Shown: in pieces, positions 21,836 to 39,900 of the stretch
How the letters are laid out: each line of letters begins with the position of its first letter
Position numbering within the stretch: the first letter of the stretch is position 1
Assembly: GCA_977017575.1 (NCBI GenBank)
Contig: CDRNVI010000065.1
Coordinates: forward strand, 310,001 to 374,000
DNA from: Paramoeba atlantica
Lineage: Eukaryota; Protista; Discosea
DNA: 64,000 nt
Reading direction: 5' to 3'
Position numbers and translations under genes: made by a program
The notes under the pieces: generated by a model
Databases searched by the model: none
Told to the model about the DNA's origin: nothing
The model's input: only the letters and a program-made list of their open reading frames with translations

Positions 21836-22771
21836 TAAACCCCGCCCAACGAATAAGTCACCCCCCACTTTTTCTTACACGTGAGGGCCTACGGGGGTTT
21901 ATGCACCACTTTGCCGTTCAGAATTTCGAGATCTATCCTGCTATTTCTAGCTCATTTTAAAATGTTAAAATATTAAAAAAAATGTTAATTGTTTTTTCGA
22001 AAAAATGCCTAAATCCGCATACCGACTGCCAAAAGGGGGGCTTACGAATAGCGCGAAGGTTCTTTTGAGGATGAGAGACGGGCAGGGAGTCTCAAAAAAG
22101 CAATTGTCCCGCGATTTCAATGTTTCAGTTAAAATGGTAAAAAATATTTGAAAGAAAAAAAACCCACCCCACAGTACGCAATGAGTAACGCAAAAAAAGT
22201 ATTCAGTATCGAAGAGAAAAAATTAAGAAAGTTCTTGATCCTCTCGACCCCGCCGATGTTGTAATGTAAAGACGTTGAAGAAAATACAATTTCCACAGAA
22301 TTGTATGTTTCAACAAGATGGGGCTACGGCACACACTGCCCGTTCCTCTATGGAGCACATTACAGGTAGAATGAGTGATGTACTTAAAAATTGACCCCCC
22401 AATTCACCTGACCTTTCCCCCATAGAAAACGTTTCGTCGATGGTCCAGAATGCGGTGGACGAAAAGACTCCATCGGATAAACCTTCACTTATCCGATGTA
22501 TACGCAAAGCGTGGTCTCGTTTGCCACAAAAGGTGATCGATAAAACTGTTTTGAGTTTTGATGCTCGCCTTAAGAAGTGTATAGAACTCAAAGGCGAAAA
22601 AGTGACAAAATGGAAATTGTAATCTAGAAACGCTAGTTGTTCTTTGTTTCAGCCCACTCTTAGGTGCGCAAAGTTCCTATGGTGAGATCTGCAAAATGCA
22701 ACAAAAATGAGCTCAAACGGCCACTTGGCCGAAAAAAAAGTGGGGGGTGACTTTTCGTTGGGCGGGGTTTA
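21836..22771 (+). mobile_element. Non-autonomous Tc1/mariner-type element with ~39-bp TIRs and TA flanks
   Basis: TA|taaaccccgcccaacgaataagtcaccccccactttt ... aaaagtggggggtgacttttcgttgggcggggttta|TA; encloses a transposase pseudogene. Confidence 0.75.
22307..22622 (+). pseudogene. Tc1-like transposase C-terminal pseudogene
   Basis: FQQDGATAHTA...KN*PPNSPDLSPIENVSSMVQ..IRKAWSRLP..FDARLKKCIELKG; the conserved Trp is replaced by TGA at about 22392. Confidence 0.85.
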
Positions 22772-23833
22772 TATAGGTAGAAAAAATAAAAGTACTATAA
22801 AGTACCTATACTACTTTAAAGCTTTGTGTACCTATAATTTTAGAGGTCGACTTTTTGTGCAATTTGGGTGGGGAATCAGTGCAGTCTGGGTGCTCGGGTC
22901 GCGGAGAGTAGGCCTTGTTGGAGGGAATGATTTTTCTGATTACCTAAAATACATAGGAAACAATATTGCACAGGTATAGTTTTCAGGCAGTTATAGTACC
23001 GAACAGGCTTCATCAGCGTCAGACGTGGAAAACACTTCTACCAGGCCTTCTCTAATCGTCGTTGATAAGCCATGCGATATCGACGATTACATTGTTGAAC
23101 AATGATATCAATGTTTCTGCCTCTAAATTTTCCACTACCAGTTGACTCCAGATTGTAGCATTTCCAGAACACAAGACACATATTGAACATGTTGTTCTAC
23201 CATGGGAATTGCCAGTGTCTGCAACAATGGATCCTGAATGGTCGCGTTTCATACTCCATGATCACACTTCCATTATATCATGGTTTCGAACACCTTTGAA
23301 AGGTTTAGGGATTGACATCAAGTTGCATTTTCAACAGCATTTTCTGTCTCCCGCTTTCTGACTCTCTTCTCCTTCACTATGACTCAGGGATGAAGAGTAT
23401 GAGGTTCGAGTGCTTTTTTCGCAAGCAAAGTTCCACTTTTCCGGCCTGCACCTCCTTGTAAGTAGTACAAGGTCTTATTGCGGGGGTTGTTTACAACCTC
23501 TGCCTCTTCGTCTTTATGGTGGCCGGGTGGGGGTGAATCGAGACGGGTGATAAAATCCCAAAAAAAAGGGGGGGGGCTCGATGAAAGGGGTACTGTTGAT
23601 TTTCATTTTCGCCAAGTCGTCGGGTCCAGTGACTCTACATCTGAGAGGGCTGGGTTCGATTCCCACTGAAGTACTTTTAGTCCGACTACACAGGGATTAG
23701 CTAAGAAGCTTGGGTCCACGATATCGGACGGATTGGTCCATTTGCCTAGCCCACGCATTAGCATGCGCGTTGGAAGGGGGTTCGAACCCGCTACTCGTAG
23801 TTTTTGCACAAACTACATGAAGCACAAACGTCA

Positions 23834-24017
23834 GTGGGAAGCAATTTGCGAAGCCGAAGTGGGGGTATGGCGAGGGCCCGCGTGAGCGGTCCTGAGCCAT
23901 ACGCGACGTCGTTAGTGGGAAGCAATTTGCGAGGCCGAAGGGGTGGTATGGCGAGGGCCCGCGTGAGCGGGCATGAGCCATACGCGGCGTCGTTAGTGGG
24001 AAGCAATTTGCGAAGCC
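23834..24017. repeat. 81-bp tandem repeat, about 2.3 copies
   Basis: gtgggaagcaatttgcga recurs at 23834, 23915 and 23996. Confidence 0.9.
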
Positions 24018-24566
24018 CCGTTTGACAACATTGCTAATAAGGCTGGACAAATTTAGCTCGACTTTCTGTATTACCCGAGCGCCCAGGCATTGAAAAATTT
24101 CAACCAAATAGTACGATTCCAGTGCAAATCACTGACAAAAAAGTAAAGGTAGATAAAGGTAGGGAAAAATAAATATAGTTACTTTAAAGTACCTATAATA
24201 AAGTTTTATAGTTATTCGGACCCCTGCTTGGGAAATAAAGCACATCATGTGCAACAGCGTTGATATTTTGGTGAAAAAGGGTGGATTCTCACATTGGCGG
24301 AAGAGTGACAAGTGTTCTGGACAAGTTATTGTGAATTTTTCACGTATAACGGAACGCTTAAAAGAAGAATTTCCTTCTAAAGATTGTATTTTCAAAAGTG
24401 GTCAGATTGTGGTGGCACAACCGTGAGAATCATAGTGATCTTGTTTCTAAAAAGGTGTCATGCGGTGATTGTCGCCCAGGCACGCTTCCTGCGCATGAGC
24501 CATTGGTAACACATGGTTACCGAGTTTACCATGCATGGTATACCGGTAGGTCACCGGTCACCCGCT

Positions 24567-24754
24567 ATTCCGTCCCATTGTGCACCTTCACCCACCCGTC
24601 TCGTCTCATTTCAGTTTGGTGCGAGAACCAGGCTGGTGGGTTCCTGTATTATAATAATACAGGAACTTATAATACAGGAACCCACCAGCCTGGTTCTCGC
24701 ACCAAACTGAAATGAGACGAGACGGGTGGGTGAAGCTGTACAATGGGACGGAAT
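24567..24754. repeat. Near-perfect 88-bp-arm inverted repeat (hairpin) with 12-nt spacer
   Basis: 24567-24654 is the reverse complement of 24667-24754, with 2 mismatches near the outer end. Confidence 0.92.
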
Positions 24755-25041
24755 TTATGATCGAGCTAACCTCCTCCTGGGAGGAAAACTTTACAGAGGC
24801 TCATGAGCGGAAAGCTCAGAAATACAGCTATATTTATAATCAACGGAAACTACATAATCCGTCGACGTTTCTTCTTGTCTTTGAAGTAGGGGCAAGGGGG
24901 AAGTTAAACTCTACTACGCGCGCTCTAAATTCCCTATTCGCAGGCAGCAAAAGTGCTGCTTCTGCGTGCCGGGAGAAGATGGTCCGGCGCGCTATTCGAA
25001 GTAGTTTTGTAATCTACCAGCACCGTGACAACCCTACGTAG
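24712..25041 (+). mobile_element. C-terminal restriction-like endonuclease (REL) fragment of an R2-group/HERO-like non-LTR retrotransposon
   Basis: MRRDG..MIELTSSWEENFTEAHERKAQKY..FEVGARG..AIRSSFVIYQHR parallels RPD..IELTxPWE..A.ERK..KY..EVGxRG. Confidence 0.75.
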
Positions 25042-25279
25042 GAGGTGCTCAACTTTCAGCAGTGACGACTTCTAAGCAAACAGCACGTTTTGTGCGTGTC
25101 TTCTTTCTCAGTGATTATCTCTGCAGCTCAGCTGCACGATTAATATAGAGCCTTGTTGTGGGCAGTCGTGTGTGAATCTGTAATGTATCCTTCCGAGGAT
25201 TACGGAGACGATTTTCTAAAAATCGTTTCGTCAGTTTATTCTAAGCCAAGAGCAAAAGGAGCTATTAAATATTTAATGG

Positions 25280-25635
25280 CCAGGTACTGGTTTCCCCCCA
25301 GGCTACAGAGCATTCAACCTAATTCCTGTGTAATTCAACTAATCTCGAAAAGCTGGAGCGTTTCCCGCCGTTTGTTTGCCTATCACCCCCCCCTCCTTGG
25401 GTCAAAAATAATTAGAAAACAACGCGAAGAAAGAGCATATTTTTACTAAAACATCCCACTTTTTCAAAAATTTCCCAACTTTGACCATGCCCATCCAGGA
25501 CCCAGGGGGGGGGGGGTGATAGGCAAACAACCGGCGGGAAACTCTCCTGCTTTTCGAGATCTGTTGAATGCCAAAGGAATTAGTTTAAAAGCTATTACGG
25601 TGTGCTCTGTGGGCTGGGGGGAAATCAATATCTGG
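25280..25635. mobile_element. Foldback/MITE-like element with ~125-bp imperfect inverted arms
   Basis: tctcgaaaagctggagcgtttcccgccgtttgtttgcctatcacccccc..gggtc (25343-25403) is inverted at 25499-25560; weaker matching extends to 25280 and 25635. Confidence 0.7.
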
Positions 25636-26081
25636 ACTGTACTACTGTGCCAGTCGTGAGACACATGTTATATTGGTGAAAGATCTCGCCTATTATTTTC
25701 GCAGTGTATAGTGTGATATTAAAAATTCGGCAATATTGGTTCAATCTGACGACGAATTTTTTTTATTAATTCGCCAATATCACAAAGTGACCGACTTGTC
25801 AGTAAAGATTTTTTTTTAATTGGTACAATGCAATACTACTCCCGTACATTCGATCGATCATGATAAGGCAGATAAAAATATTCACGCATAGTAGGCAAGA
25901 AAATAATCATATTTCGAAGAAAAAGTGACAAATCAGTATGCCGTACAGACAGACAGAGTTGTTTCTCAAAAAATAGAAACTAGAGGTACAATAGAAACTA
26001 ATGAAAACAAAGAATTAGATGAACAAAAATTTTGTTTGAAAACGGCAAGGTGCGCATGAAAATTTTATAAGTTCTGAATAT

Positions 26082-29000
26082 TTAAAGAATATTTGTTAAT
26101 TCAAAACGGGACAGAGAATGTAAATTCTGTCCGCGATACAGTGTAACAGGAAACATGAGATCGTAAAACGCTATTTCAGGCCAAGTTGTCTGAAACGTTT
26201 TTGAAACAGAAGCTAGAATACCCTTCACATCGTTCGCTACTGTGTCGATTACACTCTTGTGACAGTCTACCCAGACGCTGTCATGTACAGTATTTGTTAA
26301 AAAAGCCATGTTACCGTAATTATTGTTCCCTACAAAATGCCTCCACAATTTTCCCAACATTACCTGCACTATTTCTGCAGCAAACCCTTGAACAGGATAG
26401 TTCCTCAGTTGTGTATTCGAAACACTAATAGATTCGGAAGTTTTCATCATCACGCCCGTCGAATTACCATCACATACTGCAGAAAGGTGAAAACGAGTTC
26501 CGCTTAGCAAAAACACATTAGACATATCGGTGGGAACTCTGCTTGCACCCTTGTTAGTGAGTTCCAATATCTGTGCGCTGTGAGTTGCTATAGTGCGCAG
26601 CATTCCAAAATATCGCTCAACATCGGCATATGTGGCGTTTTCCGCTTCAATGACTTTCTCAACAGCATCCAAAGAAAGAGAGGTATGCTGGGCGATGGTT
26701 TGAGGGCTTGCCCCATATTGTCGTTGAAACGAAAAAACTTTCGCCTTTTGGCGTAAATTAACCATTCCAGGGTCTTTTTCTCGCACTGATGCGCGCAAAA
26801 TGTTTTCGTACCCAAGTTCTGGAGAAATCATCGCGGCGCGCTTACAATGAAAATCTACACCATCATGGAGGTCGTTCAGCAAATTGCGATCTCCCGATAG
26901 GGCAGCTAAAGCACGAACTTCTAGCTGAGAATAATCTCCCTCAAGCATCATTCCTTCAGAATGAAAACGTGATACAAGCAATTCTCGTATCTCCGCGCGT
27001 TTTGGAATGGATTGTGTGTTTGGATTTCTTGCCGACATGCGTGTTGTTACACTACTCGTCAGCATGAATTCAGTGTGCAGACGGGATACTGAAGAGTGAA
27101 CTAGAGAAAACATTCCACTATCCGACGGATCCGACGAAGGGGTCTCTTTTCCGTTCCGCATAAAAGATGACGACAGCCTACAAAGAAGTCGAAACTCCCG
27201 TAAATCTTTGCTTAAAATACATCCTTTAGATATACAGATCTCAAGAAGGTCGCTGAGTGTAATTTTAAAATTATTTGTCGCATTTCCATCCTCTTCAAGC
27301 AAATCAAGAAAAGCTTCGTCGCGTTCGACAGGATCAGGGCAAACTGCGTAACATAGGGGCATCCGATCCGTAATATGCAGCTTTTGCTTCACAGTATTCA
27401 ACCTTGTAGAGCTCGCAGCAACCTCTTCTTTCGACCATACTCTGCAAGAAAAACTAATATCACACGAGAGGGAACAGTTGGAAAGATACAGCTCAAGGAC
27501 ATTTTCGGCGGAATTCCAGTCAAAATCGATACACCAGCCATCAGGAATACTCTTGCCAAAAAATTGGGTCAAGCCTAAGTTCATTCTCTGGCGCAACGCT
27601 TGTATTTTATGGGCAACATCTGATTTCTTTGACTTGATGGTCTCACATCCCACATATAGCCCATTAAATTCCATTTCAACTGTACATGGCACAATATCCA
27701 TCCGGGCTTCAATAACCAACGCTTGTTTGTTCGCCACAGCGATCTCTAGCTGCCTTCGGAATATGCGCTCCGTATTACGAAGATCCCCCTCAAGGTATTC
27801 ACGAAGCAAATTGGTGTCAATGTCGGCAGTGTCCACTCCGCGGTCCCACATGGCTTTGATTGCATCTAGCTTTCGTGTCCCCCCGTAGCGTACGGCGACT
27901 TCGTTAAGGCCTGCACCCGTTCCTACACGAACCCTCTGGCCGCTAAGCAGATACTCCGCATACATTGTATCCCACACACGTCCTCCGCGACGCAGAAATC
28001 GACGCAGCTCTGGGTCTTTCCATAACCACAGAAGATCAAATTTCAGGTTGTGTCCCACAATCACGTCGTACTCGTCTAATGGTGGGAGTTTCATATCCTC
28101 ACGATGCTGCAATTTCTCTTCTGGAATTGTGAGATTTCCGTTGTAGTCGAGGTACCCTGGGAGAACCACACGATTCTGGTCACAAAAAGGACTCGCCATT
28201 CTCTTATGAAAACATTTTCTGGTCGTGTACATGAAAATGAAAAATGGAGCGCGATAGAAACGTAGCACGCAATTCTCTCTTTTCGCTCTGTCAGCGCTAC
28301 GAAAAAAGTTGAGATATAACTTGGGATCAGCGAACTTTTGGTCGCTAATTACGGGTACATTTTTTCCGGCATTTCGGCTTCCTTGTGTGTGTGATGCTGC
28401 AGGGTGTACGTCCCAATTTCTGTTTTTATATATTGCGTGAGCTAGACGAGAAACTGTGACGCTTTGTGTTATAGTGCATAGTTCGTGCAAGGCTGTTTCT
28501 GGAGCTTGCGCTTCGGAGATAAAACAAGGATGAAGATCCATGGATTTTACTGCTTGTAGTCGGAGGTGTATGTAAGAATTTAAAACAAAGGGTGATGTTT
28601 CTGAAGTCATGCAAGAGTTCCACATATCAGCGCACTTAAATGTAAACTCAAATGAAGCACCCGAGCATGGTATTAACAAGACAGCCCCTGTAAGTCTCTG
28701 GTATTTCTTTTCGGCACCATTCGTGTACTTTCGAGGCCGGAAAAACTTGGTATGAAGCGCATGCAAAGCTTCGCTCTCGGATGCGCAAGCCTCTGAAAAA
28801 TATACTTTAGATGCATTAATTTCATTTTTTGATTCTATTGGACCCTGAACTAATGATAATGGCATTAGCAGTGCTGAAATTTTGACAGACTTGCCTGAAT
28901 GGTCCCGTGTATTTGCTAAGGAAATAAAACATATTGAAGCGGGGTTACGCATGAATTGAGAAACAACGATCTCCTTTGATTTTTCAAACGCGGCCAATCG

Positions 29001-29453
29001 TTTCAGCTCATTAAGTTGACGGCGCACTTCGTTGGCTTCTGATAAAGAGTCGTGAGTGGGATTATCACTTCGTTTGACGTCGCTATTCTTGTAGTTTTGC
29101 TTAAATCTCTCTTGCATTGTTTTGATAGAATCTGTTGTAGGGAGATTAGTCAAAAATGAGAAGTGATCAATATCGAATCCCGTATCAGCTGGAATGACGA
29201 TCGGTATTAGTGGAGAAGATAAAGTTTCTTGTTTGCGCACCTGTTGACTTACCCACTTTTTGCAGTCTTCGATGCATGAAGAACTTCTTAAATCGACGTC
29301 GCGATGAGATCCTGTACTGACTTCAATCAAGGTAAAGCAAGATACTGGAATTGAAATTTTACTGAAGCCTTGATGCCGCAAGGTTCCTAGGCAAAAAAGT
29401 GCAGACATTTGTCTTGTTACATCGCATGACACCTCAATAGAAGTTTTATTCAA
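26082..29453 (-). CDS. Family A DNA polymerase (kinetoplast Pol I-like), ExoI motif degenerate
   Basis: ExoII HNLKFDL, ExoIII YLEGDL, TTRMSARNPNTQSIP, motif A EGDYSQLE, motif B RQKAKVFSFQRQYG, NYPVQG, motif C TVHDS. Confidence 0.93.
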   Translation of the reverse strand: MNKTSIEVSCDVTRQMSALFCLGTLRHQGFSKISIPVSCFTLIEVSTGSHRDVDLRSSSCIEDCKKWVSQQVRKQETLSSPLIPIVIPADTGFDIDHFSFLTNLPTTDSIKTMQERFKQNYKNSDVKRSDNPTHDSLSEANEVRRQLNELKRLAAFEKSKEIVVSQFMRNPASICFISLANTRDHSGKSVKISALLMPLSLVQGPIESKNEINASKVYFSEACASESEALHALHTKFFRPRKYTNGAEKKYQRLTGAVLLIPCSGASFEFTFKCADMWNSCMTSETSPFVLNSYIHLRLQAVKSMDLHPCFISEAQAPETALHELCTITQSVTVSRLAHAIYKNRNWDVHPAASHTQGSRNAGKNVPVISDQKFADPKLYLNFFRSADRAKRENCVLRFYRAPFFIFMYTTRKCFHKRMASPFCDQNRVVLPGYLDYNGNLTIPEEKLQHREDMKLPPLDEYDVIVGHNLKFDLLWLWKDPELRRFLRRGGRVWDTMYAEYLLSGQRVRVGTGAGLNEVAVRYGGTRKLDAIKAMWDRGVDTADIDTNLLREYLEGDLRNTERIFRRQLEIAVANKQALVIEARMDIVPCTVEMEFNGLYVGCETIKSKKSDVAHKIQALRQRMNLGLTQFFGKSIPDGWCIDFDWNSAENVLELYLSNCSLSCDISFSCRVWSKEEVAASSTRLNTVKQKLHITDRMPLCYAVCPDPVERDEAFLDLLEEDGNATNNFKITLSDLLEICISKGCILSKDLREFRLLCRLSSSFMRNGKETPSSDPSDSGMFSLVHSSVSRLHTEFMLTSSVTTRMSARNPNTQSIPKRAEIRELLVSRFHSEGMMLEGDYSQLEVRALAALSGDRNLLNDLHDGVDFHCKRAAMISPELGYENILRASVREKDPGMVNLRQKAKVFSFQRQYGASPQTIAQHTSLSLDAVEKVIEAENATYADVERYFGMLRTIATHSAQILELTNKGASRVPTDMSNVFLLSGTRFHLSAVCDGNSTGVMMKTSESISVSNTQLRNYPVQGFAAEIVQVMLGKLWRHFVGNNNYGNMAFLTNTVHDSVWVDCHKSVIDTVANDVKGILASVSKTFQTTWPEIAFYDLMFPVTLYRGQNLHSLSRFELTNIL
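27685..28196. repeat. ~510-bp block nearly identical to 31925-32436 (exonuclease region of both PolA genes)
   Basis: Offset of 4240 bp; I found about 4 mismatches by eye. Confidence 0.9.
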
Positions 29454-29781
29454 TATTTTTCGAAGAAATAATTTTTTTATTCCAGTAAGTTTCTCATTTG
29501 TTTCCTTTTACGTACAGGACCCTACTTATCGTACATTGTATACATTTACTATCCCAGGCTTATCTTATGACGCCCCTTACGAAACGTCCGAAAATTTGTT
29601 CGATGAAGCATTCTACATTCAGTCTCTCAAAGCTTACTCTATGCATATGGATACAATTCGAAATTAAATGAGGGGGCAAAATATGGGTTATTAAAAGGCA
29701 CTTATTTTGATATAGTTTACAAAAAAAATAGTTTACATTCAACCTATTTTTGTGCTCGTCGATATACAGATATACGGTGGA

Positions 29782-32700
29782 CTATTCCAATGCCTTCATG
29801 TTGGCCATTGTTTTTCCAACGACCGTCTCTGTGCCAAAAGAAACTTCAAGCTCTAATTCAGGCCACTTCTCGTTAAAAACCTCACGAACATTATTCAGTA
29901 TGCGACTCACGTTACCTGCTACTTCATGAACGACGCTCTTGTGACAGTCTACCCATACGCAATCATGTACAGTGTTTGTTAAGAAGGCCATGTTATTGTA
30001 ATTTTCTGTTTCGAGAAAATGTCTCCAGAGCCTTCCCATCATAACTTGAACAATTTCTCCTGCAAATCCTTGCACTGGATAATTTTTCAGTTGTGTAGAG
30101 AGAAAGCTCATCAAATTTGTGTCTGAAAAGCGGGAATTCGCAAACGCTGCTCGCTCAATTTCACCAAAAGTAAAACGCGTTCCTGTAAGTACACGAAATT
30201 CTCCTTTGTATGCACAGTTTCCGGTTTCAGTGCGACTTCCATCCTGAAGAGAAGGATTCCATGAGTTGACTGCGTGTGCCACAAGGTCGTAGAATCGTTT
30301 GACTTTATAATACATGGATTCCTCGTTTTGAATCAAACTTTTAACTTCATCGAACGAAAGACCAGTAGATTCGGAAAGCTTGGTAACTCCTGCCCCGTAC
30401 TGTCGCTGAAAAGAAAATATTTTGGCTCTTTGTCGTAGCTCCACAAATTCGGGAATTTTTTCTTTTTTTGCTTTCTGCAGAACTTCTTCGTATGAAAGGC
30501 CTGGTTTCATCATAGTGACACGTTTGCAATGAAAGTCGACTTTGTTAAGAAGATCTTGAGTCATTTGGGGATCCTTCGAGAGAGCACACATCACGACAAC
30601 TTCTAATTGAGAATAGTCTGCTTCCAACATGGAACCTTCTTCGCCAAACCGTGAAACAAAAAGGTTCCGCAGCTCGGTCGTCTTTGGAACATTTTGCATA
30701 TTTGGGTTTGCTGACGCCATTCTGCTTGTCGTCGTATGGCAGAGTGAAAGTTCATGATGAATGCAGTCATCACGATCATTCAACAGGCTCATCATCCCTG
30801 TTCCATCCATTTCATAGTAAGTACTTAGAAGTTTAGTGTTTCCTCGAAGTTCAAGAAGCAATTTTGCAATTGCCTCACCTTTGGCAGCAAATACCTCCAT
30901 GACTTCAATGTTTACGCTTTGATTTCCCTTTTCTGTCTTCGCTTTCTCAAGAAACTTTGCTCTCTCGTTCCTATCGGAAAAATATTGTTCCAGTTTTCCT
31001 GGAAAGGAGACTACAGTGTCAACGTCTTTATCAACTTCATGAGCAAAGCAGTCGTAGCTTGTTCCCACAGAAGAACCTATACAGTAAAGTAGATTCTGAA
31101 GAACTTCTCGTTGAGCAACGTCGTTGCCCTCAGAATTTATGCTTGTGAAAACTACTTTTTTAAGAAGTGTCCAAAAATCAGTGCAATCAATAGGTTTTTG
31201 ATAAGGGCCTCCTTTATACAACTCTACTGCCCGACAAAAGAAACTTTTCCGATCATCGTGAAAAATATTGTGACGTTCGAAGTAGGATAAAATCTCAAGT
31301 TCGGCTTCATCAAAAGAAATGAAGAGCACCCTTTCTCCATCCCCACCCTGGCAGAGTGATTCTAAGTTAATCTCTCCAGTATCCTTTCCTTCCGTGTTTG
31401 GTACAGAGTAATGCTCTTCAGTGTAGTGCGTTTCCGAGTTGCGTGACGTGGGTTTTAAAGGCTCATATAGCCATGGCTTATTTTCAGCAAAGCCACCACA
31501 TAATATTACTCTAAAATTGTAAGTCGCCTTCTTGGACACAAATGCTTTCAAGCGCTCTTGAACATTATCCTTTGTACCGCTCGTACGCAAACCTTGAGAT
31601 TTCAAATAAGGGATACTATATTTCTTTGCCGCAGCCCCACTAAATTTGTTCGCCAGAACGCAGAGTTCTACAGCTGCAGTTACATTCAAAGGCGTTCCAA
31701 GCATGCTAGGTTCCGCAACTTTGGCTTTTCCACCGTAGTACAAGGCGGAAAGTACTTGATTTGACGCCCAGTTAAAATGCTGGTGAAAGAGCAGAGGCAC
31801 TTCTGGGGGTATCAATTTCTTTAACCCGGCTTTTTGTTGAGCAATTACGAGCCGCAGAGCGTCGTATTGTCGTTTACCCTCTAATCTATCCATCTTCAAA
31901 CCGTTGAACTCCATCTCGGTTGTGCATGGCACAATATCCATCCGGGCTTCAATAACCAACGCTTGTTTGTTCGCCACAGCGATCTCTAGCTGCCTTCGGA
32001 ATATGCGCTCCGTATTACGAAGATCCCCCTCAAGGTATTCACGAAGCAAATTGGTGTCAATGTCGGCAGTGTCCACTCCGCGGTCCCACATGGCTTTGAT
32101 TGCATCTAGCTTTCGTGTCCCCCCGTAGCGTACGGCGACTTCGTTAAGGCCTGCACCCGTTCCTACACGAACCCTTTGGCCGCTAAGCAGATACTCCGCA
32201 TACATTGTATCCCACACACGTCCTCCGCGACGCAGAAATCGACGCAGCTCTGGGTCTTTCCATAACCACAGAAGATCAAATTTCAGGTTGTGTCCCACAA
32301 TCACGTCGTACTCGTCTAATGGCGGGAGTTTCATATCCTCACGATGCTGCAATTTCTCTTCTGGAATTGTGAGATTTCCGTTGAAGTCGAGGTAGCCTGG
32401 GAGAACCACACGATTCTGGTCACAAAAAGGACTCGCAATGCGCTTGTGGAATTTTTTCGTGGTTGTTTCCAAATCGAGTACAAGATAATTCGCATGGCGG
32501 AGACTCACACACGCTTCACGTACCTGGCGGTCAGAGGTGTCAAATGTTTTGTAGTACTTGGTGAGCTCTAGTTTCGTAGAAATGTCAACAAAGCCTTTAC
32601 TGAGGACTGTAAAAGTTTTTGGATTCGGTGGTTCCGGAACCTCAACGAATTTGCCGGGTGTCGACGTTGGAGAAGGCGAATATTGGTCTTGTGATTCATG

Positions 32701-34272
32701 GGTGGAATCCATACGCATTGTTACGGATTGTAAGTGCCTGAGAGCAAGGTTTAAAAAAGTAGAAAGCGCCGGAGGTTCACCGCCGAACATCGTAGCAACT
32801 CCTTTCCACGCTAATTTCGGTTCTTCTTCCAATGAAACTTGAGACTGCATCAAGCTTGAGTGTGAAAGCGCGTGAAGTCGGATTATTTTGTTTCGATTAG
32901 AATGAGCCAATTGCTCTAAATCGGAGAGTTTGGTCCCCTGGCACGGTATTAGTAGCACGTGAAGTCGAAAAGCTGTGTCAAAGTGGGTGCTGAGCTGTTG
33001 TACAATTTCGCTAAGTGAAGAAGCCTCGATTTTCAGCGAAGCATGCGTGCAAATGCTGAACATGTGGTATTTAAATACTGTCTTTCCTGACTTATCAGCT
33101 CCTACCTTGTAGGAAACGAAATTAATATCGAAAATTCCTCGCAGAGAAGAGAGCATTTGCTCTTCTGGAGAAGATTTACCACCCAAATGACGCAAGGTCA
33201 CTTTACAAGTCTCCCAAGCAAGAATGGCGTTACTTATTTCAGGTTGTGACTCCTTGCATTGAAATGATGAGCTGCATATCATGAAATATGCATCTTTAAG
33301 CGTTCTTGGCATGCGTAATCCCTTAATTCGACCAACGTGCTCGAAGAAAGCAGAAGAACACAATGCCATTGAATCTTGTAGAAGATGGCATTTGAATAAC
33401 TTGCAGATGTCTTCGACATGTGGATCAGAATACATGGGTAGAAGGGCTGCGCACGCCATAGGACCGATGCTAACACATTTTTTCTGGATCCAACTTCGAA
33501 CGTCTTCTACATCCTTCTTGTTACTGGGCTTGAAAACGCGATGCTCCTGACTTTGCACGTGAAACAGAGCAAATTTTTGAGGTGAAGAAGCCTTTATCAG
33601 CCCATTTAGAGGAGCCGTCGAAGCTGGAGTCTGCGTGGAGGATTGAATATCCCAGCCCAAAGCAAAAACAACATAACGAGGTGATACATTTTTAACGTGA
33701 TGTTGGACCCCTTCCGTGAGCTCTTCTACGGAGTTAGAATATTCCAAATTATGTGCCGCGCAATATGTTTTCAATAGCGCGGGAGTTAGCTTTGCAGTTC
33801 GGTACCCCAAAATAATCTGTCTGACTCGTGTTGAGGATAGAGTTTCTCTCCATTTGTAGTGACTGCGAGCAATGTGCCGTCCCCCCTGCAGGGTCGCAAT
33901 AGAGACCTCGCTCGACTCTTCAGAAGATAGTTTTTCCACTGGTTTTAGAAGAGGCACTGCAGGAGCTCTGCCTTTCCGACGAGAACCGACCTTTTCCGAC
34001 GAGAAAGGAAAGGCGGAGTTATCCCTTGCAGGCATATCACCATTACCAACCGAGGCCGGGGACGAAATCGATGATTCAAAATTCGACATATGATTCCTAG
34101 CATTCAGCTCAGTAGTATTTGAAGACTGGGGTGGAACGCCAGATGAATTTCTAATGAATTCTGAAGGTGTGGATGAAGATATGGCCTTCGCACCAAAATC
34201 ACTTTTGGGAACTGTAGTAGTGGCTGGTTTTTTCACCAGTCCCTTAATTTTAGAACGCAGAACGGCTAACAT
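29782..34272 (-). CDS. Family A DNA polymerase (kinetoplast Pol I-like) with intact 3'-5' exonuclease motifs
   Basis: ExoI LVLDLETT, ExoII HNLKFDL, ExoIII YLEGDL, TSRMASANPNMQNVP, motif A EADYSQLE, motif B RQRAKIFSFQRQYG, motif C TVHDC; long N-terminal extension. Confidence 0.95.
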   Translation of the reverse strand: MLAVLRSKIKGLVKKPATTTVPKSDFGAKAISSSTPSEFIRNSSGVPPQSSNTTELNARNHMSNFESSISSPASVGNGDMPARDNSAFPFSSEKVGSRRKGRAPAVPLLKPVEKLSSEESSEVSIATLQGGRHIARSHYKWRETLSSTRVRQIILGYRTAKLTPALLKTYCAAHNLEYSNSVEELTEGVQHHVKNVSPRYVVFALGWDIQSSTQTPASTAPLNGLIKASSPQKFALFHVQSQEHRVFKPSNKKDVEDVRSWIQKKCVSIGPMACAALLPMYSDPHVEDICKLFKCHLLQDSMALCSSAFFEHVGRIKGLRMPRTLKDAYFMICSSSFQCKESQPEISNAILAWETCKVTLRHLGGKSSPEEQMLSSLRGIFDINFVSYKVGADKSGKTVFKYHMFSICTHASLKIEASSLSEIVQQLSTHFDTAFRLHVLLIPCQGTKLSDLEQLAHSNRNKIIRLHALSHSSLMQSQVSLEEEPKLAWKGVATMFGGEPPALSTFLNLALRHLQSVTMRMDSTHESQDQYSPSPTSTPGKFVEVPEPPNPKTFTVLSKGFVDISTKLELTKYYKTFDTSDRQVREACVSLRHANYLVLDLETTTKKFHKRIASPFCDQNRVVLPGYLDFNGNLTIPEEKLQHREDMKLPPLDEYDVIVGHNLKFDLLWLWKDPELRRFLRRGGRVWDTMYAEYLLSGQRVRVGTGAGLNEVAVRYGGTRKLDAIKAMWDRGVDTADIDTNLLREYLEGDLRNTERIFRRQLEIAVANKQALVIEARMDIVPCTTEMEFNGLKMDRLEGKRQYDALRLVIAQQKAGLKKLIPPEVPLLFHQHFNWASNQVLSALYYGGKAKVAEPSMLGTPLNVTAAVELCVLANKFSGAAAKKYSIPYLKSQGLRTSGTKDNVQERLKAFVSKKATYNFRVILCGGFAENKPWLYEPLKPTSRNSETHYTEEHYSVPNTEGKDTGEINLESLCQGGDGERVLFISFDEAELEILSYFERHNIFHDDRKSFFCRAVELYKGGPYQKPIDCTDFWTLLKKVVFTSINSEGNDVAQREVLQNLLYCIGSSVGTSYDCFAHEVDKDVDTVVSFPGKLEQYFSDRNERAKFLEKAKTEKGNQSVNIEVMEVFAAKGEAIAKLLLELRGNTKLLSTYYEMDGTGMMSLLNDRDDCIHHELSLCHTTTSRMASANPNMQNVPKTTELRNLFVSRFGEEGSMLEADYSQLEVVVMCALSKDPQMTQDLLNKVDFHCKRVTMMKPGLSYEEVLQKAKKEKIPEFVELRQRAKIFSFQRQYGAGVTKLSESTGLSFDEVKSLIQNEESMYYKVKRFYDLVAHAVNSWNPSLQDGSRTETGNCAYKGEFRVLTGTRFTFGEIERAAFANSRFSDTNLMSFLSTQLKNYPVQGFAGEIVQVMMGRLWRHFLETENYNNMAFLTNTVHDCVWVDCHKSVVHEVAGNVSRILNNVREVFNEKWPELELEVSFGTETVVGKTMANMKALE

Positions 34273-34465: not shown

Positions 34466-35881
34466 CTAAACTACAGCAGTTGGGACAGCCACGCCTGAGG
34501 TCTTCTCACGTAATGTGTCATACAAGGAGGCGTTCGATCGGCACAGCTTCTCTGGATCTTCCGCGAAACACACAAAGATCGTCATTACCCCACTCTGGAC
34601 TACGCCAAGAATCATGCTAAGTGTGACGACACCGATAAGAAGTCCGAGTAGAAAATGTACCGGAGAGAGCCCCCAGAGTAACCCGGACAGCCCCGAGAGG
34701 ACAGAGCCCCCGAGTACCATCAGGATATAGGCCGCCCCCAACAGACTGTCGTTAATGACAGCGAGAATACCGTTTGTTTTAATTAACTGCCACACCGCCT
34801 TGGCGGAGGGAACATAACTCGTGCCGTAGACTGCAACGTAGACATACGCGTACTCATTGAAATATTCCACTAAGGATTCAATGCAATTCAGCAGACACAT
34901 TACAATGCCGCGTACAAAGTGGTTCTCATTTCGCATTCCCTCCCGCGCGAGTGCTCGGATGGTTTTTAAAATAGCAACAATCAGCGACCCAAAGCACAGG
35001 GAGCCCAGACTATAAGTCGTGGCACGTCGCAGGGCCCCAAGCGTAGGGTTTCGTGGCATTTCATTTTCTCCCGCGTAGTACCACATCGCGACGACTCCAC
35101 ACGTGGTTACATGCGTGATAGCACTTAGAACTTGAGAGGTCCAGAACAATTGTAACAACCACGGCCATAATACCCTCTCCTCCACTCCCGAACTTGAGTA
35201 CCTCCATACCCCCGTGCCCCAGATGACGACATAGGCAAAGAAAAGAAGTGAGAACACCGCAGCGTTAGCCACAGTTGCCTTGTATTGATTCACCACATTG
35301 GCACTCGCTGTGAGACAACACGCGGCGAAGGGAATACGATGCCGCACGTAGTACAGCCACACCCCAGCTATCAAACAGAGTATTCCTGTGACAATACCAC
35401 TGACCATTTGGCCAGTAAAGAAGGACAGCAGTGCGGCAACCCCGAGTAGTGAGATGTAAAACACATTTCCGTAGAGGATTAATCCCTCAGCATGGGAGCG
35501 AATAAGCCATAGCAAAGGAATAGAGATCGAAACCGAGACAAGGGTAGCGGTGGAACCTACTCCCAGAGCTCGTGTCGTCGAGGGCCATTGCCATGCGTGC
35601 GTGTCATCGGCCTCAGGGTGCAGTGTGTGATCCGGGGGAGTCATCTCAAAGGTTTCGGGGTGGTGTAGATACTCGTGAAGACGGTAAGATCCGTACCCAA
35701 TCACCAACAGGGTGGTTAATATCCAAAGTACAGCAGCCCAAATGTCGCGGTATCCACCCGCTGAGCTAAACCGCTCCTCCCCCATGTGGTTTGTGCGTGG
35801 TGAGATCGGGGACCTCTTTAGGGGCTTGTCCTCGAAGCGGTGATAGTCGGAGGAAGCAAAGTCCCCGCTCCGTGACTTCAT
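34466..35881 (-). CDS. Choline transporter-like (CTL/SLC44/Pns1) membrane protein
   Basis: YRDIWAAVLW, multiple TM segments, HVTTCGVVAMWYY, RATTYSLGSLCFGSLIVAIL, FNEYAYVYVAVYGTSY..SAK, TIFVCFAEDP. Confidence 0.9.
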   Translation of the reverse strand: MKSRSGDFASSDYHRFEDKPLKRSPISPRTNHMGEERFSSAGGYRDIWAAVLWILTTLLVIGYGSYRLHEYLHHPETFEMTPPDHTLHPEADDTHAWQWPSTTRALGVGSTATLVSVSISIPLLWLIRSHAEGLILYGNVFYISLLGVAALLSFFTGQMVSGIVTGILCLIAGVWLYYVRHRIPFAACCLTASANVVNQYKATVANAAVFSLLFFAYVVIWGTGVWRYSSSGVEERVLWPWLLQLFWTSQVLSAITHVTTCGVVAMWYYAGENEMPRNPTLGALRRATTYSLGSLCFGSLIVAILKTIRALAREGMRNENHFVRGIVMCLLNCIESLVEYFNEYAYVYVAVYGTSYVPSAKAVWQLIKTNGILAVINDSLLGAAYILMVLGGSVLSGLSGLLWGLSPVHFLLGLLIGVVTLSMILGVVQSGVMTIFVCFAEDPEKLCRSNASLYDTLREKTSGVAVPTAVV

Positions 35882-36108: not shown

Positions 36109-36687
36109 TTACTTCTGTGCGTACTTAAACGACTTCACCTTCCACCCCCGGCTCGCCCTCTTCCCCCGCGCCCGCTCATTCCCCCGCGTCGCACACTTCG
36201 GCTTCGTATGCGACCCCGGGGTCCCGGGCGCCCCGTACCGTTTCACCACCTCCCGCCGGGACTTACGCCCCCGCAGCAGCACGGTGTCACGCCCCGTCGG
36301 GGACTCCCCCGCGAGTTGGTCAAACGTCAGGCACTCCCCCCCGGCCGCCGCAACCCGCCGCGCGGCCATCTTCGAGAACCGCAGCGCGCAGATCCGCAGC
36401 CGCGGGAGCGCCACGAGCCGCACGTCGTCGAGCACCGCGGTGGGGACGACCACGATGCGGTCCCCGGTGGTCCTCCCCGCGAGCTTGACGACCCGGGAGA
36501 GGGAGAGGGAGGCGCGGTGGGTGCGGGAGAGCATGAGACGGTGCAGGACCTTCTCGTTGAACCTCGAGGCGGTGCGGCGGGCGAGGAAGCGGTAGAGCCG
36601 GACCAGGAGAAGGAGCTGGGGGTTCGCGCTTTTGGGGGACTGGCGGACGGTGCGGGGTTTGGGGAGACCTTTGGTGTCACGACCCAT
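36109..36687 (-). CDS. RPL18: 60S ribosomal protein eL18
   Basis: PKSANPQLLLLVRLYRFLARRT..FNEKVLHRL, CALRFS..AAGGECLTFDQLA, PGTPGSHTKP, ERARGKRASRGWK. Confidence 0.95.
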   Translation of the reverse strand: MGRDTKGLPKPRTVRQSPKSANPQLLLLVRLYRFLARRTASRFNEKVLHRLMLSRTHRASLSLSRVVKLAGRTTGDRIVVVPTAVLDDVRLVALPRLRICALRFSKMAARRVAAAGGECLTFDQLAGESPTGRDTVLLRGRKSRREVVKRYGAPGTPGSHTKPKCATRGNERARGKRASRGWKVKSFKYAQK

Positions 36688-36981: not shown

Positions 36982-39900
36982 TTACCTGCACTTAAGTAGT
37001 TCCGTAAGCTCATTGGCACGGACAGTATAAACGACCGCGTGCGACGCCGGGGCGACTCTTCGGGAAACGTACACCACATTCTTGAGGTGGTAGTGCTTCC
37101 CTGCTACCAAGCCTTGCACGAATCGCAATGAGCGTGAGAAAAATCGGGACGACACAACCGTATCGTCGTCCCATGATAATTCAACCACTAGAGTACGAGC
37201 TGGGGAACCTGACTCCTGATTCGGCGTATAACGAGATTCAGAAATATCCACTTTAAAATGTGCATAGCGCGACTCAGCACTCCCACTTGTGTATGCAAGA
37301 TTCCTGAAATCAATCTCATTTCCTGAATCAAGGTCACAATCTAAGTTTATTGGGGAGCCTCCGTCCATTGCACTACTCTGTATGATATCTTCGAGCACTG
37401 CAACCAATGGGGATTCCTTATCGACTTTTGAAAAAGAGTTTTGCATGGCATATGATGCAGAGAAATCTCTCGTGACATCACGAAGGGCACAGCGACGTGG
37501 GTTTCCTGTTAATGCGGAACACTGAGCGTACGAAAGCTCCGGTCGGAAGTGAACGCGCTGGTTGCGGCTCGGTAAAAGATTATGCGCTCGCAGAATAGTT
37601 CCCTCGGTAAATTCAAAATTCTCCCATGTGCGATGTAGACTGTCGATATCCCCGAGTGGAGATGTTGGTGCGGGTGATAAAACTTCTTGAGAAAGGAACT
37701 TCTCTGAAGACTGTGAGGCTTTGTCATTTGAAGGCTTACGTGGATTAATATGCAGAGGAACTTCAATAGATAAAAGTGCACATGCCTGACTGCAGAAGAA
37801 CTTCATAACACTATCACGACTTTGAGCCGTCGTGTGTTTAGTACATTGCTTTTGCTCAAAATCAGTGCTAAGGAAACACGCACAATCTTGAACCAAGTAT
37901 GTAAGTATGGCGTGTATCCTCATATTCGTCATATCCCCTCCCGCACTTTGGAGCATGCGCTGGATGGCGGAGCTGTTCAACGAGTTTGTAATCTTTATAC
38001 TAGGGCGATTATCAGACGTTCTTGGCTCGTACAGCACGGAAGAGATACGAAAGTAGACAGGATACCTGCGAAGCACAGCAATGCGCAATGAAGAAATTCG
38101 ACCTCCATCTCGATTTACACTTGCAAGTGTTCGTAGGGGTAAGGAAAACGAAGTTATAGAACAGTGTGAGTACCAACCGAGTGGTTCACCCGAGATTGCG
38201 GGTAAAACATTATTGTGCTTTACACTGAGTTCAATTAAATTTTGATTTTCCTTGACAAGCGGATGTGAAAAGTGGCATGTCGTTTTGCGTTCAAGGCCTT
38301 TGACAATAAACTTCGTCACGATAGCCCCCTTTTTGAAAGCTTTTACCGAGGATTCGTCCGCTGCGATGTACAAGGACTTCCAGTACCTATTTAATACATC
38401 GTCCACATGAACTATTGCGCAGTACCATCCATCTGTTAGCAACCAGTTATCTCCACCATCATAACCTATTAATTGCAGCACTAATGTGGCTTCCGAGCAT
38501 TCCAATCCTTCGTAGAACAGGAAAAAAGGACTACGGTGCTCGCAATCGCGCTCAAGTCGGTGCCGTTCGAAAAGGTTCGAGCACAACATGTCCAACTTTA
38601 AGCAAGGTAGTCGTTGAATCATGATACTGCACAGCAAGTGATGATAAACCCATTTTTTGCAATCTACACCGGCATACATTATCAGAGACTCACAACGTAC
38701 ACACGCAGATTTAAAAAGTGGTAGACTCCCACCTAACATGGCTGAAATGTCGTCTGACAGTACATCCAACATGAGGGTTGTACAAAACTTTAACGCACCG
38801 TCACCTTTCAGCGCGTCATTGACAAACAATACATACATGCTACTCGTAGCAACATTACACGTGTTGCATGATGCTGCGTCAGGTGTCCAGCTCGTGGGGA
38901 CCGGTAAGTCAAAATGTGACTGCGCCTTCTTCATGCTTTCCTCCGAAACGGGAAGCGGACGCCCACTTGCAGTCTGAAACATGAGTGCATCATTGCCGGA
39001 TACCTCAGCCTTACTCGTAGCAACATTACACGTGTTGCCTGATGCTGCGTCAGGTGTCCAGCTCGTGGGGACCGGTAAGTCAAAATGTGACTGCGCCTTC
39101 TTCATGCTTTCCTCCGAAACGGGAAGCGGACGCCCACTTGCAGTCTGAAACATGAGTGCATCATTGCCGGATACCTCTGCCTTACTCGTAGCAACATTAC
39201 ACGTGTTGCCTGATGCTGCGTCAGGTGTCCAGCTCGTGGGGACCGGTAAGTCAAAATGTGACTGCGCCTTCTTCATGCTTTCCTCCGAAACGGGAAGCGG
39301 ACGCCCACTTGCAGTCTGAAACATGAGTGCATCATTGCCGGATACCTCAGCCTTACTCGTAGCAACATTACACGTGTTGCCTGATGCTGCGTCAGGCGTC
39401 CAGCTCGTGGGGACCGGTAAGTCAAAATGTGACTGCGCCTTCTTCATGCTTTCCTCCGAAACGGGAAGCGGACGCCCACTTGCAGTCTGAAACATGAGTG
39501 CATCATTGCCGGATACCTCTGCCTTACTCGTAGCAACATTACACGTGTTGCCTGATGCTGCGTCAGGTGTCCAGCTCGTGGGGACCGGTAAGTCAAAATG
39601 TGACTGCGCCTTCTTCATGCTTTCCTCCGAAACGGGAAGCGGACGCCCACTTGCAGTCTGAAACATGAGTGCATCATTGCCGGATACCTCAGCCTTACTC
39701 GTAGCAACATTACACGTGTTGCCTGATGCTGCGTCAGGCGTCCAGCTCGTGGGGACCGGTAAGTCAAAATGTGACTGCGCCTTCTTCATGCTTTCCTCCG
39801 AAACGGGAAGCGGACGCCCACTTGCAGTCTGAAACATGAGTGCATCATTGCCGGATACCTCAGCCTTACTCGTAGCAACATTACACGTGTTGCCTGATGC

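What the first reader, a model, noticed from the sequence alone, without database searches (positions are those of the whole stretch)
26082..34272. Tandem kinetoplast-type PolA pair: one proofreading, one with a dead ExoI motif
Seen: both genes keep polymerase motifs A, B and C. The 1496-aa copy has ExoI YLVLDLETTTKKFHKRIASPF; the 1123-aa copy has PFFIFMYTTRKCFHKRMASPF (28201-28255), without the Asp and Glu. Their N-terminal and inter-domain regions are unrelated by eye. Known: ExoI D/E are essential metal ligands, and kinetoplastids use several Pol I-like mitochondrial polymerases with distinct roles. Inference: subfunctionalised paralogs, a high-fidelity replicase next to an error-tolerant, strand-displacing or repair enzyme for mitochondrial DNA.
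Basis: partly seen in the sequence, partly recalled or inferred. Interest (0 to 1): 0.7.

Follow-up and report, generated by a model that had tools for sequence, protein, structure and literature searches.

The report
POLID gene beside exonuclease-dead paralogue
Two neighbouring mitochondrial-type DNA polymerase genes of an uncultured early-branching relative of trypanosomes are a normal proofreading POLID and a very diverged, so far unique copy that keeps its polymerase residues but lacks two essential proofreading residues. A recent 510-base copy-paste from POLID rebuilt the rest of its proofreading domain, which is a tidy but fairly ordinary case of paralogue evolution.

Summary
Two family-A polymerase genes lie head to tail on the minus strand: 29782-34272 (1496 aa) and 26082-29408 (1108 aa from the first ATG; 1123 from a TTG).

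- **Long gene.** It is a clear POLID orthologue. It groups with prokinetoplastid-type POLIDs at 100/100 support and has all DEDDy exonuclease motifs.
- **Short gene.** It is a long-branch member of the kinetoplastid PolIB/C/D radiation with no orthologue in the databases searched.
  - It keeps 32 of 33 invariant polymerase-domain columns and has coding-like codon usage throughout.
  - At ExoI it has Phe392 and Tyr394 where at least 90% of 61 relatives have Asp and Glu.
  - It lacks POLID's inter-domain insert.
Codons 405-574 of the short gene (27687-28196) differ at only 4 of 510 nt from codons 613-782 of POLID (31927-32436). Everywhere else synonymous sites are saturated. This is a recent gene-conversion tract, POLID to short gene, and it ends about 10 codons after ExoI. 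ExoII and ExoIII in the short gene are therefore borrowed, and only the dead ExoI reflects the short gene's own history. Another note of this scan on the same stretch (s1-396410) had flagged the tract.
- **Verdict.** [quoted passage not shown] is supported at sequence level. The proposed roles remain inference. Dead exonuclease domains are already known in POLIB, POLIC, Taq and Bst, so this is a new member of a known kind.

The parts
29782..34272 (-). Long gene, 1496 aa: POLID orthologue (P0001)
   Evidence: ORF. The polymerase domain is 67-70% identical to prokinetoplastid-type POLIDs and about 50% to trypanosomatid and Bodo POLID. It sits in the POLID clade at 98/95 and in its subclade at 100/100.
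26082..29408 (-). Short gene, 1108 aa from the first ATG (P0002); the ORF extends to a TTG at 29453
   Evidence: Pfam DNA_pol_A E 3e-33. Long branch (1.4) inside the kinetoplastid PolIB/C/D radiation at 99/96. Codon usage is coding-like in every part.
32461..32484 (-). ExoI of the long gene, LVLDLETT (Asp600, Glu602)
   Evidence: Asp and Glu are conserved in all POLID, PolI-dipl-type and phage-type relatives aligned.
28221..28244 (-). Dead ExoI of the short gene, FFIFMYTT (Phe392 and Tyr394 in place of Asp and Glu)
   Evidence: The AF2 model places residues 388-395 on a confident beta strand, with pLDDT above 93. Asp and Glu are at least 90% conserved at these columns in 61 relatives.
27687..28196 (-). 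Gene-conversion tract, acceptor copy (short-gene codons 405-574; carries ExoII HNLKFD and ExoIII YLEGD)
   Evidence: It differs at 4 of 510 nt from the long gene. pS is 0-0.06 inside the tract and 0.6-0.9 outside, with sharp edges.
31927..32436 (-). Gene-conversion tract, donor copy (long-gene codons 613-782)
   Evidence: The tract is 66-69% identical at protein level to POLID orthologues P0007-P0010, the same level as the rest of the long gene. It is therefore native to POLID.
26085..27128 (-). Polymerase core of the short gene (residues about 761-1108): motif A GDYSQLEV 26916-26939, motif B 26712-26753, motif C NTVHDS 26277-26294
   Evidence: It keeps 32 of 33 invariant columns and 54 of 61 columns that are at least 90% conserved among 44 relatives.
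29785..30972 (-). Polymerase core of the long gene (residues 1101-1496)
30973..31926 (-). POLID-specific inter-domain region of the long gene, with a SAP-like motif at 31540-31605; absent from the short gene
   Evidence: The spacing from the end of the exonuclease domain to motif 2 is 404 aa in the long gene and about 217 aa in the short gene. The SAP match has E 8.5e-4 and is below Pfam's cut-off.
29409..29781 (-). 373-nt spacer between the two genes
   Evidence: Read. It contains pyrimidine-rich stretches followed by AG, compatible with trans-splicing. This was not tested.

Best explanation
The long gene is this organism's POLID, a mitochondrial family-A polymerase with a working DEDDy proofreading site. 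The short gene is a lineage-restricted, fast-evolving member of the same PolIB/C/D family. It probably descends from an old POLID-like duplicate.

The short gene still encodes a catalytically complete polymerase. Its exonuclease domain has become a non-catalytic module, because the two ExoI metal ligands are replaced by Phe and Tyr. This is the natural equivalent of the Klenow D355A/E357A exo-minus enzyme, and of the vestigial exonuclease domains of Taq, Bst and Pol theta.

Recently a 510-nt stretch coding for the rest of the exonuclease domain (ExoII and ExoIII) was copied from POLID, 4.2 kb upstream, into the short gene. The copying stopped about 10 codons short of ExoI. The domain is therefore a mosaic: a new POLID body on the old dead first strand.

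Shown here: gene identities, residue states, the tract, the direction of transfer and conservation of the polymerase core. Inferred: loss of exonuclease activity, retained polymerase activity, mitochondrial location, and a supporting role such as gap filling or repair, like exonuclease-less POLIC.
For: - **POLID identity of the long gene:**
- **Short gene placement:** it lies inside the kinetoplastid clade at 99/96 but outside the POLID clade, on a 1.4 branch. A sister relationship to its neighbour is rejected (AU p 0.0175). Union with the prokinetoplastid-type POLIDs is not rejected (p 0.14).
- **ExoI:** Asp and Glu are replaced by Phe392 and Tyr394 through multi-nucleotide changes. The strand is modelled confidently.
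- **Tract:** 4 of 510 nt differ, while synonymous sites are saturated elsewhere. The tract sequence is POLID-like.
- **Polymerase core:** 32 of 33 invariant columns are kept, comparable to the essential POLIB. Codon usage is coding-like in all parts, including the N-terminus.
- **Fold:** the model resembles Bst, Klenow, Klentaq and Pol theta across both domains, TM 0.73-0.78.
- **Literature:** T. brucei POLID has exonuclease activity. POLIC polymerises without a predicted exonuclease domain (PMC9731263).
Against:
- No orthologue exists for measuring selection on the short gene's own branch.
- The N-terminus of the short gene is only weakly presequence-like, with 2 K/R in the first 30 residues against 7 in POLID.
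- A single conversion between sequences that are only about 40% identical in the flanks is mechanistically awkward.
- The long branch could also reflect relaxed constraint.
Confidence: 0.68

Rival explanations
1. The short gene is a decaying duplicate on its way to becoming a pseudogene. The dead ExoI, long branch and missing orthologues reflect relaxed constraint, not a distinct job.
For: Its branch is 1.4 against 0.24 for POLID. No orthologue was found, and the N-terminal 300 residues have no relative among 1.84 billion representatives. It borders a 5-kb gene-free stretch rich in transposons and hairpins.
Against: The 1108-codon frame is uninterrupted even though synonymous sites are saturated against every relative. 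It keeps 32 of 33 invariant polymerase columns and all of motifs A, B and C. Codon usage is coding-like in every segment, unlike the non-coding control.
Confidence: 0.12
2. The near-identical 510 nt are an assembly or consensus artefact, with reads of one gene polished into the other. On this reading the short gene really has its own diverged exonuclease core.
For: The contig comes from a metagenome-type assembly and is the only record of both proteins. No reads could be laid on it.
Against: The two copies are not identical: 4 differences lie within the tract, 3 of them synonymous. The tract is in frame and in exact homologous register. Both edges fall in conserved motif-coding patches, as expected for recombination between homologues.
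Confidence: 0.07
3. The short enzyme still proofreads. Other residues take over metal binding, or the converted ExoII and ExoIII residues suffice.
For: ExoII Asp and ExoIII Tyr/Asp are present, and the domain is modelled with pLDDT above 93.
Against: Both ExoI ligands are replaced by bulky aromatic residues. No Asp or Glu occurs between residues 380 and 409. The Klenow D355A/E357A double mutant is the textbook exonuclease-null enzyme (established knowledge, from memory). ExoII and ExoIII are present only because of the recent conversion.
Confidence: 0.05
4. The short gene is this lineage's version of a named paralogue (POLIC, POLIB or PolI-Perk1/2), disguised by fast evolution.
For: Its place in the PolIB/C/D polytomy is unresolved. 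Harada et al. 2020 likewise could not resolve PolI-Perk1/2 (PMC7238167). POLIB and P0118 also lack the ExoI Asp and Glu.
Against: - Its identity is highest to POLIDs (40-45%). It is 42% to POLIC, 34-35% to POLIB and 35-38% to the candidate Perk-type proteins P0118 and P0076.
- It has no DEDDh insertion in the thumb: the spacing is about 217 aa against about 460 aa in POLIB.
- It does not sit next to glutathione synthetase as POLIC and its positional orthologues do.
Confidence: 0.08

Closest known systems
POLID of Trypanosoma brucei and other kinetoplastids (PolIBCD+ family)
   Same: The long gene groups with it at 98/95 and has the DEDDy motifs, a C-terminal PolA domain, a long N-terminal region and an inter-domain insert. 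T. brucei POLID shows polymerase and 3'-5' exonuclease activity (PMC9731263).
   Different: It is shorter (1496 against about 1630 aa). It did not match the DUF8342/DUF8343 families recorded for trypanosomatid POLIDs and has SAP-like motifs instead. Its locus is different, and no other POLID locus examined has a second PolA beside it.
POLIC, and the N-terminal exonuclease-like domain of POLIB, in trypanosomatids
   Same: These are paralogues of the same family whose Klenow-type exonuclease domain is degenerate. POLIB has Ala/Met or Tyr/Ala at the ExoI positions, and POLIC lacks ExoI altogether. POLIC still polymerises and is essential (PMC9731263).
   Different: The short gene is in neither clade. 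It has no DEDDh insert and no POLIC-type synteny. Its exonuclease domain is intact apart from ExoI, because of the conversion.
PolI-Perk1 / PolI-Perk2 of Perkinsela sp. (Harada et al. 2020, PMC7238167)
   Same: They are lineage-restricted, unresolved members of the PolIB/C/D radiation in an early-branching kinetoplastid, and only a polymerase domain is recognisable by Pfam.
   Different: No specific similarity was found: 35-38% identity to the candidate proteins P0118 and P0076, lower than to POLIDs. That those two hits are Perk1/2 is my guess from their sources, not a verified identity.
Klenow D355A/E357A exo-minus mutant; vestigial exonuclease domains of Taq, Bst large fragment and Pol theta
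   Same: They have the same two-domain fold, with TM 0.65-0.78 to Bst, Klenow, Klentaq and Pol theta. The polymerase is active while the exonuclease carboxylates are missing.
   Different: They are distant in sequence (17-19% identity). In those enzymes several or all four carboxylates are gone, whereas here only the ExoI pair is.
Interlocus gene conversion between tandem paralogues (described for tandem arrays in T. brucei, PMC1855330, title and abstract only)
   Same: It is a short, sharply bounded, non-reciprocal identity tract between neighbouring paralogues on one polycistronic strand.
   Different: Here the partners are otherwise saturated at synonymous sites (about 40% nt identity in the flanks). 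Ordinary homology-dependent conversion is therefore not an easy fit.

Membership tests
PolIBCD+ (kinetoplastid/diplonemid mitochondrial family-A polymerases) | The polymerase domain falls in the kinetoplastid + diplonemid clade next to autographivirus-type phage PolA, away from bacterial Pol I | tested here: met
   Both genes meet this. The K+D clade has 95/87 support and the kinetoplastid subclade 99/96, in a careful IQ-TREE of 68 rows.
PolIBCD+ | [quoted passage not shown] | tested here: inconclusive
   Both genes share with phage-type and K+D proteins the extra residues after the DFHCKR motif that bacterial Pol I lacks. The paper's text does not give the position of its 8-aa insertion, so I cannot say these are the same insertion.
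PolIBCD+ | Mitochondrial targeting | not testable with these tools
   The first 30 residues hold 7 K/R and 1 D/E in the long gene, and 2 K/R and 1 D/E in the short gene. No targeting predictor or localisation data were available.
POLID | Groups with T. brucei, Leishmania and Bodo POLID | tested here: met
   This applies to the long gene: 98/95 for the 21-row POLID clade.
POLID | Short gene inside the POLID clade | tested here: inconclusive
   The best tree leaves it outside. Sister to its neighbour is rejected (p 0.0175). Union with the five prokinetoplastid-type POLIDs is not rejected (p 0.14).
POLID | Large insert between the exonuclease and polymerase domains (379-736 aa from the end of the exonuclease domain to motif 2) | tested here: not met
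   This applies to the short gene: about 217 aa, like the diplonemid-type sequences and the one phage-type protein measured (193-239). The long gene has 404 aa.
DEDDy proofreading exonuclease (Pfam DNA_pol_A_exo1 type) | Four carboxylates (ExoI Asp and Glu, ExoII Asp, ExoIII Asp) plus the ExoIII Tyr | tested here: met
   This applies to the long gene: LVLDLETT, HNLKFD and YLEGD. The Pfam match is weak (E 3e-4, below the cut-off), as it is in other POLIDs.
DEDDy proofreading exonuclease | ExoI Asp and Glu in the short gene | tested here: not met
   Phe392 and Tyr394.
POLIB | DEDDh (RNase_T type) exonuclease inserted in the polymerase thumb | tested here: not met
   The short gene has no RNase_T match. 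Its spacing is about 217 aa against about 460 aa in POLIB. It is not in the POLIB clade.
POLIC | Groups with POLIC, and lies directly upstream of glutathione synthetase | tested here: not met
   The short gene is not in the POLIC clade. Downstream of it are 5 kb without long ORFs and then a transposase. The POLIC-GS adjacency is seen in T. brucei and in loci L004 and L005.

The most novel reading that the evidence does not exclude
The 510-nt identity is not a one-off accident but the visible end of recurrent conversion. On this reading, conversion has kept the exonuclease body of the short enzyme identical to POLID's while selection keeps ExoI dead. The tract edge 10 codons from ExoI would then be a selected boundary. 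The short polymerase would need a POLID-compatible, non-catalytic exonuclease-domain surface, for example to bind the same partner or a 3' end at the kinetoplast replication site, and conversions that restored proofreading would be purged.
Probability: 0.12. Interest if true: 0.55.

Novelty: new member of a known kind. Interest (0 to 1): 0.35.

Why it matters
Kinetoplastids are the only eukaryotes known to run their mitochondrial DNA with several Pol I-like enzymes, and how the work is shared among them is still open. Harada et al. (2020) noted that the polymerase inventory of the earliest-branching kinetoplastids rested on Perkinsela alone.

This locus adds three things. It gives a firm POLID from another early-branching lineage. 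It adds a further lineage-specific paralogue with an inactivated proofreading site. It also shows that motif presence can mislead, because two of the three exonuclease motifs in the short gene were pasted in recently from its neighbour.

As a by-product, POLIC-like genes that sit next to glutathione synthetase occur on two uncultured kinetoplastid-like contigs. This suggests POLIC may be older than its reported distribution.

Tried and rejected
- **Reads.** There is no test of expression, trans-splicing or assembly.
- **First word search.** The search with the whole long protein used only the unconserved first 500 residues and found just bacterial Pol I. It was repeated on the polymerase domain.
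- **A second, older conversion tract.** The polymerase C-terminus has 163-180 nt at 77-80% identity. I rejected it as a tract because synonymous sites there are saturated (pS 0.67-0.89), so the identity reflects amino-acid conservation only.
- **Orthologues of the short gene.**
  - The word search on its polymerase domain found none above 45% identity.
  - The full HMMER search of 1.84 billion representatives with residues 1-300 found nothing. Its only hit, P0178, is a 76-aa-repeat protein whose weak repeats sum up.
- **N-terminal region of the short gene.**
  - It has no Pfam family.
  - The Atlas feature search scored 0.82 or less, which is noise level.
  - AF2 without an alignment gave pLDDT 35, which is unusable.
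  - Profile and shuffle tests against POLID N-termini gave only faint colinear traces: p about 0.002 for residues 104-177, a shared VLLIPC.G motif, and global z 2.4.
- **Tandem PolA pairs elsewhere.** No second PolA lies within 8-10 kb (or to the contig end) in six POLID loci and three POLIC-type loci. The unannotated 1268-aa neighbour in L009 is not PolA-like.
- **Flanks of the tract.** They are not specifically closer to the neighbouring gene than to any other relative.
- **Exonuclease pocket geometry.** The structure tool returns no coordinates, so the pocket could not be inspected.


Full report
**What is there**

The window is a eukaryotic contig whose long ORFs almost all lie on the minus strand. 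It carries a BRCA2 gene with about 21 BRC repeats, BOP1, an eRF1/pelota-like gene and eIF5. Earlier notes of this scan describe the genome as an uncultured, early-branching (Perkinsela-related) kinetoplastid with spliced leaders. I did not test that myself beyond the affinities of the polymerases.

At the stated place there are two ORFs:
- 29782-34272, 1496 aa, starting with ATG.
- 26082-29453, 1123 aa from a TTG. The first ATG is at 29408 and gives 1108 aa.

They are separated by 373 nt. Both exact proteins are in the public collection as singletons from one 70.7-kb ENA contig, without names. Both match Pfam DNA_pol_A strongly and DNA_pol_A_exo1 weakly, below the curated cut-off. T. equiperdum POLID scores just above that cut-off, and two other POLID orthologues fall below it.

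The two ExoI strings are exact. The short one lies at 28185-28247 rather than 28201-28255.

In a 34-sequence alignment of the exonuclease region, the ExoI Asp and Glu are present in every POLID, every diplonemid-type sequence and every phage-type relative. The short gene has Phe392 and Tyr394 (ATG numbering) in their place. In a 61-sequence alignment these two columns are at least 90% Asp and Glu. The codon changes are GAT to TTC and GAA to TAC, so this is old divergence and not an error. No Asp or Glu occurs between short-gene residues 380 and 409 that could stand in.

Motifs A (DYSQLE), B (R..K..FSFQRQYG) and C (VHD) are present in both genes. The Glu that follows HD in bacterial Pol I is Cys or Ser throughout this family, so that is not a defect.

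**What the two genes are**

With words drawn from the polymerase domain, the long protein finds several groups of relatives:
- Three unnamed ENA proteins at 68-69% identity.
- A transcript of strain PhF-6 at 66%. PhF-6 is a free-living prokinetoplastid according to PMC7859406 (title and search hit only).
- Annotated POLIDs of Trypanosoma, Leishmania and Bodo at about 50%.

In a careful maximum-likelihood tree of 68 polymerase domains (LG+C20, bacterial Pol I as outgroup), the long gene sits in a 100/100 clade with those four sequences. That clade lies inside a 98/95 POLID clade. It is a POLID orthologue.

The short gene lies inside the kinetoplastid PolIB/C/D radiation (99/96) on a 1.4-substitution branch. 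It joins none of the POLIB, POLIC or POLID clades. Two AU tests bear on its origin:
- Short and long genes as sister sequences is rejected (delta lnL 35.6, p 0.0175).
- Holding the short gene with the five prokinetoplastid-type POLIDs is not rejected (p 0.14).

Its polymerase domain is about equally distant (38-45%) from its neighbour and from all other POLIDs. It is 42% identical to POLIC and 34-38% to POLIB and two possible Perkinsela-type proteins.

The distance from the end of the exonuclease domain to motif 2 is about 217 aa. This is like the diplonemid-type sequences and the one phage-type protein measured (193-239) and unlike POLID (379-736) or POLIB (about 460).

The first 294 residues of the short gene are essentially orphan:
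- They have no Pfam family.
- They have no relative among 1.84 billion representative proteins. The single hit is a repeat-protein artefact.
- They show only faint, colinear traces of the POLID N-terminal region.

I read the short gene as an old, fast-evolving, lineage-restricted offshoot, most likely of a POLID-like ancestor. This origin is not proven.

**The tract**

blastn of one gene against the other shows roughly 550 nt at 96-97% identity inside genes that otherwise barely align at DNA level. A codon alignment gives exact limits. Short-gene codons 405-574 (27687-28196) match long-gene codons 613-782 (31927-32436). They differ at four nucleotides, three synonymous and one Tyr/Phe.

In 30-codon windows the proportion of synonymous differences is 0-0.06 inside the tract and 0.6-0.9 everywhere else. 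The change happens within a few codons at both edges. Just outside the edges, even conserved amino acids use different codons, for example F-H-K-R on the 5' side and E-M-E-F-N-G on the 3' side.

At protein level the tract is 66-69% identical to POLID orthologues, exactly as the long gene's polymerase domain is. It is therefore POLID sequence, and the short gene was the acceptor.

The tract covers the whole exonuclease domain except its first strand. It includes ExoII (HNLKFD) and ExoIII (YLEGD). The short gene's intact ExoII and ExoIII are thus recent imports. Only ExoI, 10-13 codons upstream of the tract, reports its own history. A second candidate tract near the polymerase C-terminus is only amino-acid conservation. 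Another note of this scan had flagged the same tract (s1-396410). I found it independently.

**Is the short gene alive?**

Evidence for a working gene:
- The 1108-codon frame is open although synonymous sites are saturated against every relative.
- It keeps 32 of 33 columns that are invariant in 44 other kinetoplastid and diplonemid polymerase domains, and 54 of 61 columns that are at least 90% conserved. This is similar to essential POLIB (57 of 62).
- Every segment, including the orphan N-terminus, has in-frame codon usage like the other genes of the window. A non-coding control does not.
- An AlphaFold2 model of residues 295-1108, built with a 61-sequence alignment, has mean pLDDT 84 and pTM 0.84. 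The exonuclease domain is above 93, and residues 388-395 form the first strand.
- The model superposes over both domains on Bst large fragment, Klenow, Klentaq and Pol theta (TM 0.65-0.78). By my own knowledge, Bst large fragment, Klentaq and Pol theta have naturally inactive exonuclease domains.

Evidence against, or missing:
- There is no orthologue for a branch-specific dN/dS.
- The N-terminus is only weakly presequence-like.

**How it probably works**

POLID is the proofreading enzyme. T. brucei POLID has both polymerase and exonuclease activity, while POLIC polymerises without a predicted exonuclease domain and is nevertheless essential (PMC9731263).

By analogy, the short protein should be an exonuclease-less polymerase whose exonuclease-like domain is structural. 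Whether it fills gaps, repairs, displaces strands or has a non-catalytic role is inference.

Degenerate Klenow-type exonuclease domains are already the rule in POLIB (its N-terminal domain lacks the ExoI pair), in POLIC and in P0050. The kind of thing is therefore known.

**What remains odd**

Conversion normally needs near-identity to start, yet the flanks here are about 40% identical. Three explanations are open:
- The event used the short conserved patches at the two edges. Short-homology recombination is well known in trypanosomes (my own knowledge).
- The tract has been homogenised repeatedly since the duplication.
- The assembly is at fault, which is unlikely given the four differences and the exact register.

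**Context**

None of six other POLID loci has a second PolA within 8-10 kb or to the contig end. These are three prokinetoplastid-type loci, T. equiperdum and two metagenomic loci. The tandem arrangement is so far unique to this contig.

Downstream of the short gene lie 5 kb without long ORFs. That stretch holds a hairpin, a tandem repeat and a Tc1/mariner-type transposase between 62-nt inverted repeats. This part of the contig has therefore taken up mobile-element and repeat DNA.

**Verdict**

The pair is a new member of a known kind and of modest interest.

Noticed in passing
L004:10001-14693, L005:8035-13026, L006:6001-13758: Two roughly 1040-aa PolA genes from uncultured kinetoplastid-like contigs (P0050, P0077) lie directly upstream of glutathione synthetase, exactly as POLIC does in T. 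brucei chromosome 7. They do not join the POLIC clade in the polymerase tree. They may be positional POLIC orthologues, which would make POLIC older than the Trypanosomatida + Eubodonida range given in PMC7238167.
   Followed up: partly
window 36982-42849 (-): A 1955-aa BRCA2 homologue with 21 matched BRC repeat stretches (Pfam E 3e-173). It also gives an odd HTH_psq match with no single significant stretch. This is also noted by the scan as s1-396301.
   Followed up: no
window 19850-21462: A Tc1/mariner-type element: a 380-aa ORF on the plus strand (19974-21116; DDE_3 and HTH_Tnp_Tc3_2 matches) between 62-nt inverted repeats that are 97% complementary (19850-19911 and 21401-21462).
   Followed up: partly
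window 21500-26080: About 4.5 kb downstream of the short polymerase gene has no ORF over 140 aa. It contains an 88-nt, 98% complementary hairpin (24567-24754), a 95-nt inverted pair (25309-25593) and two 81-nt tandem units (23829-23990).
   Followed up: no
window 44343-52002 and 54872-62532: A block of five ORFs (eIF5-like, WLM, 232 aa, 561 aa, eRF1/pelota-like) is repeated with identical ORF lengths about 10.5 kb further on. This is a recent segmental duplication.
   Followed up: no
window 31540-31605 and 33694-33789 (-): The POLID here carries one weak SAP-domain match in its inter-domain insert (E 8.5e-4) and, by eye, a second SAP-like helix-turn-helix near residue 162-193. The PhF-6 orthologue also has a recorded SAP-type hit. 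Trypanosomatid POLIDs instead carry DUF8342/DUF8343.
   Followed up: no
window 34466-35881 and 36109-36687 (-): A choline-transporter-like protein and ribosomal protein L18e lie between POLID and BRCA2. The gene order around POLID here differs from the TMA7-POLID-PEX11-like order shared by three related genomes (L001-L003).
   Followed up: partly
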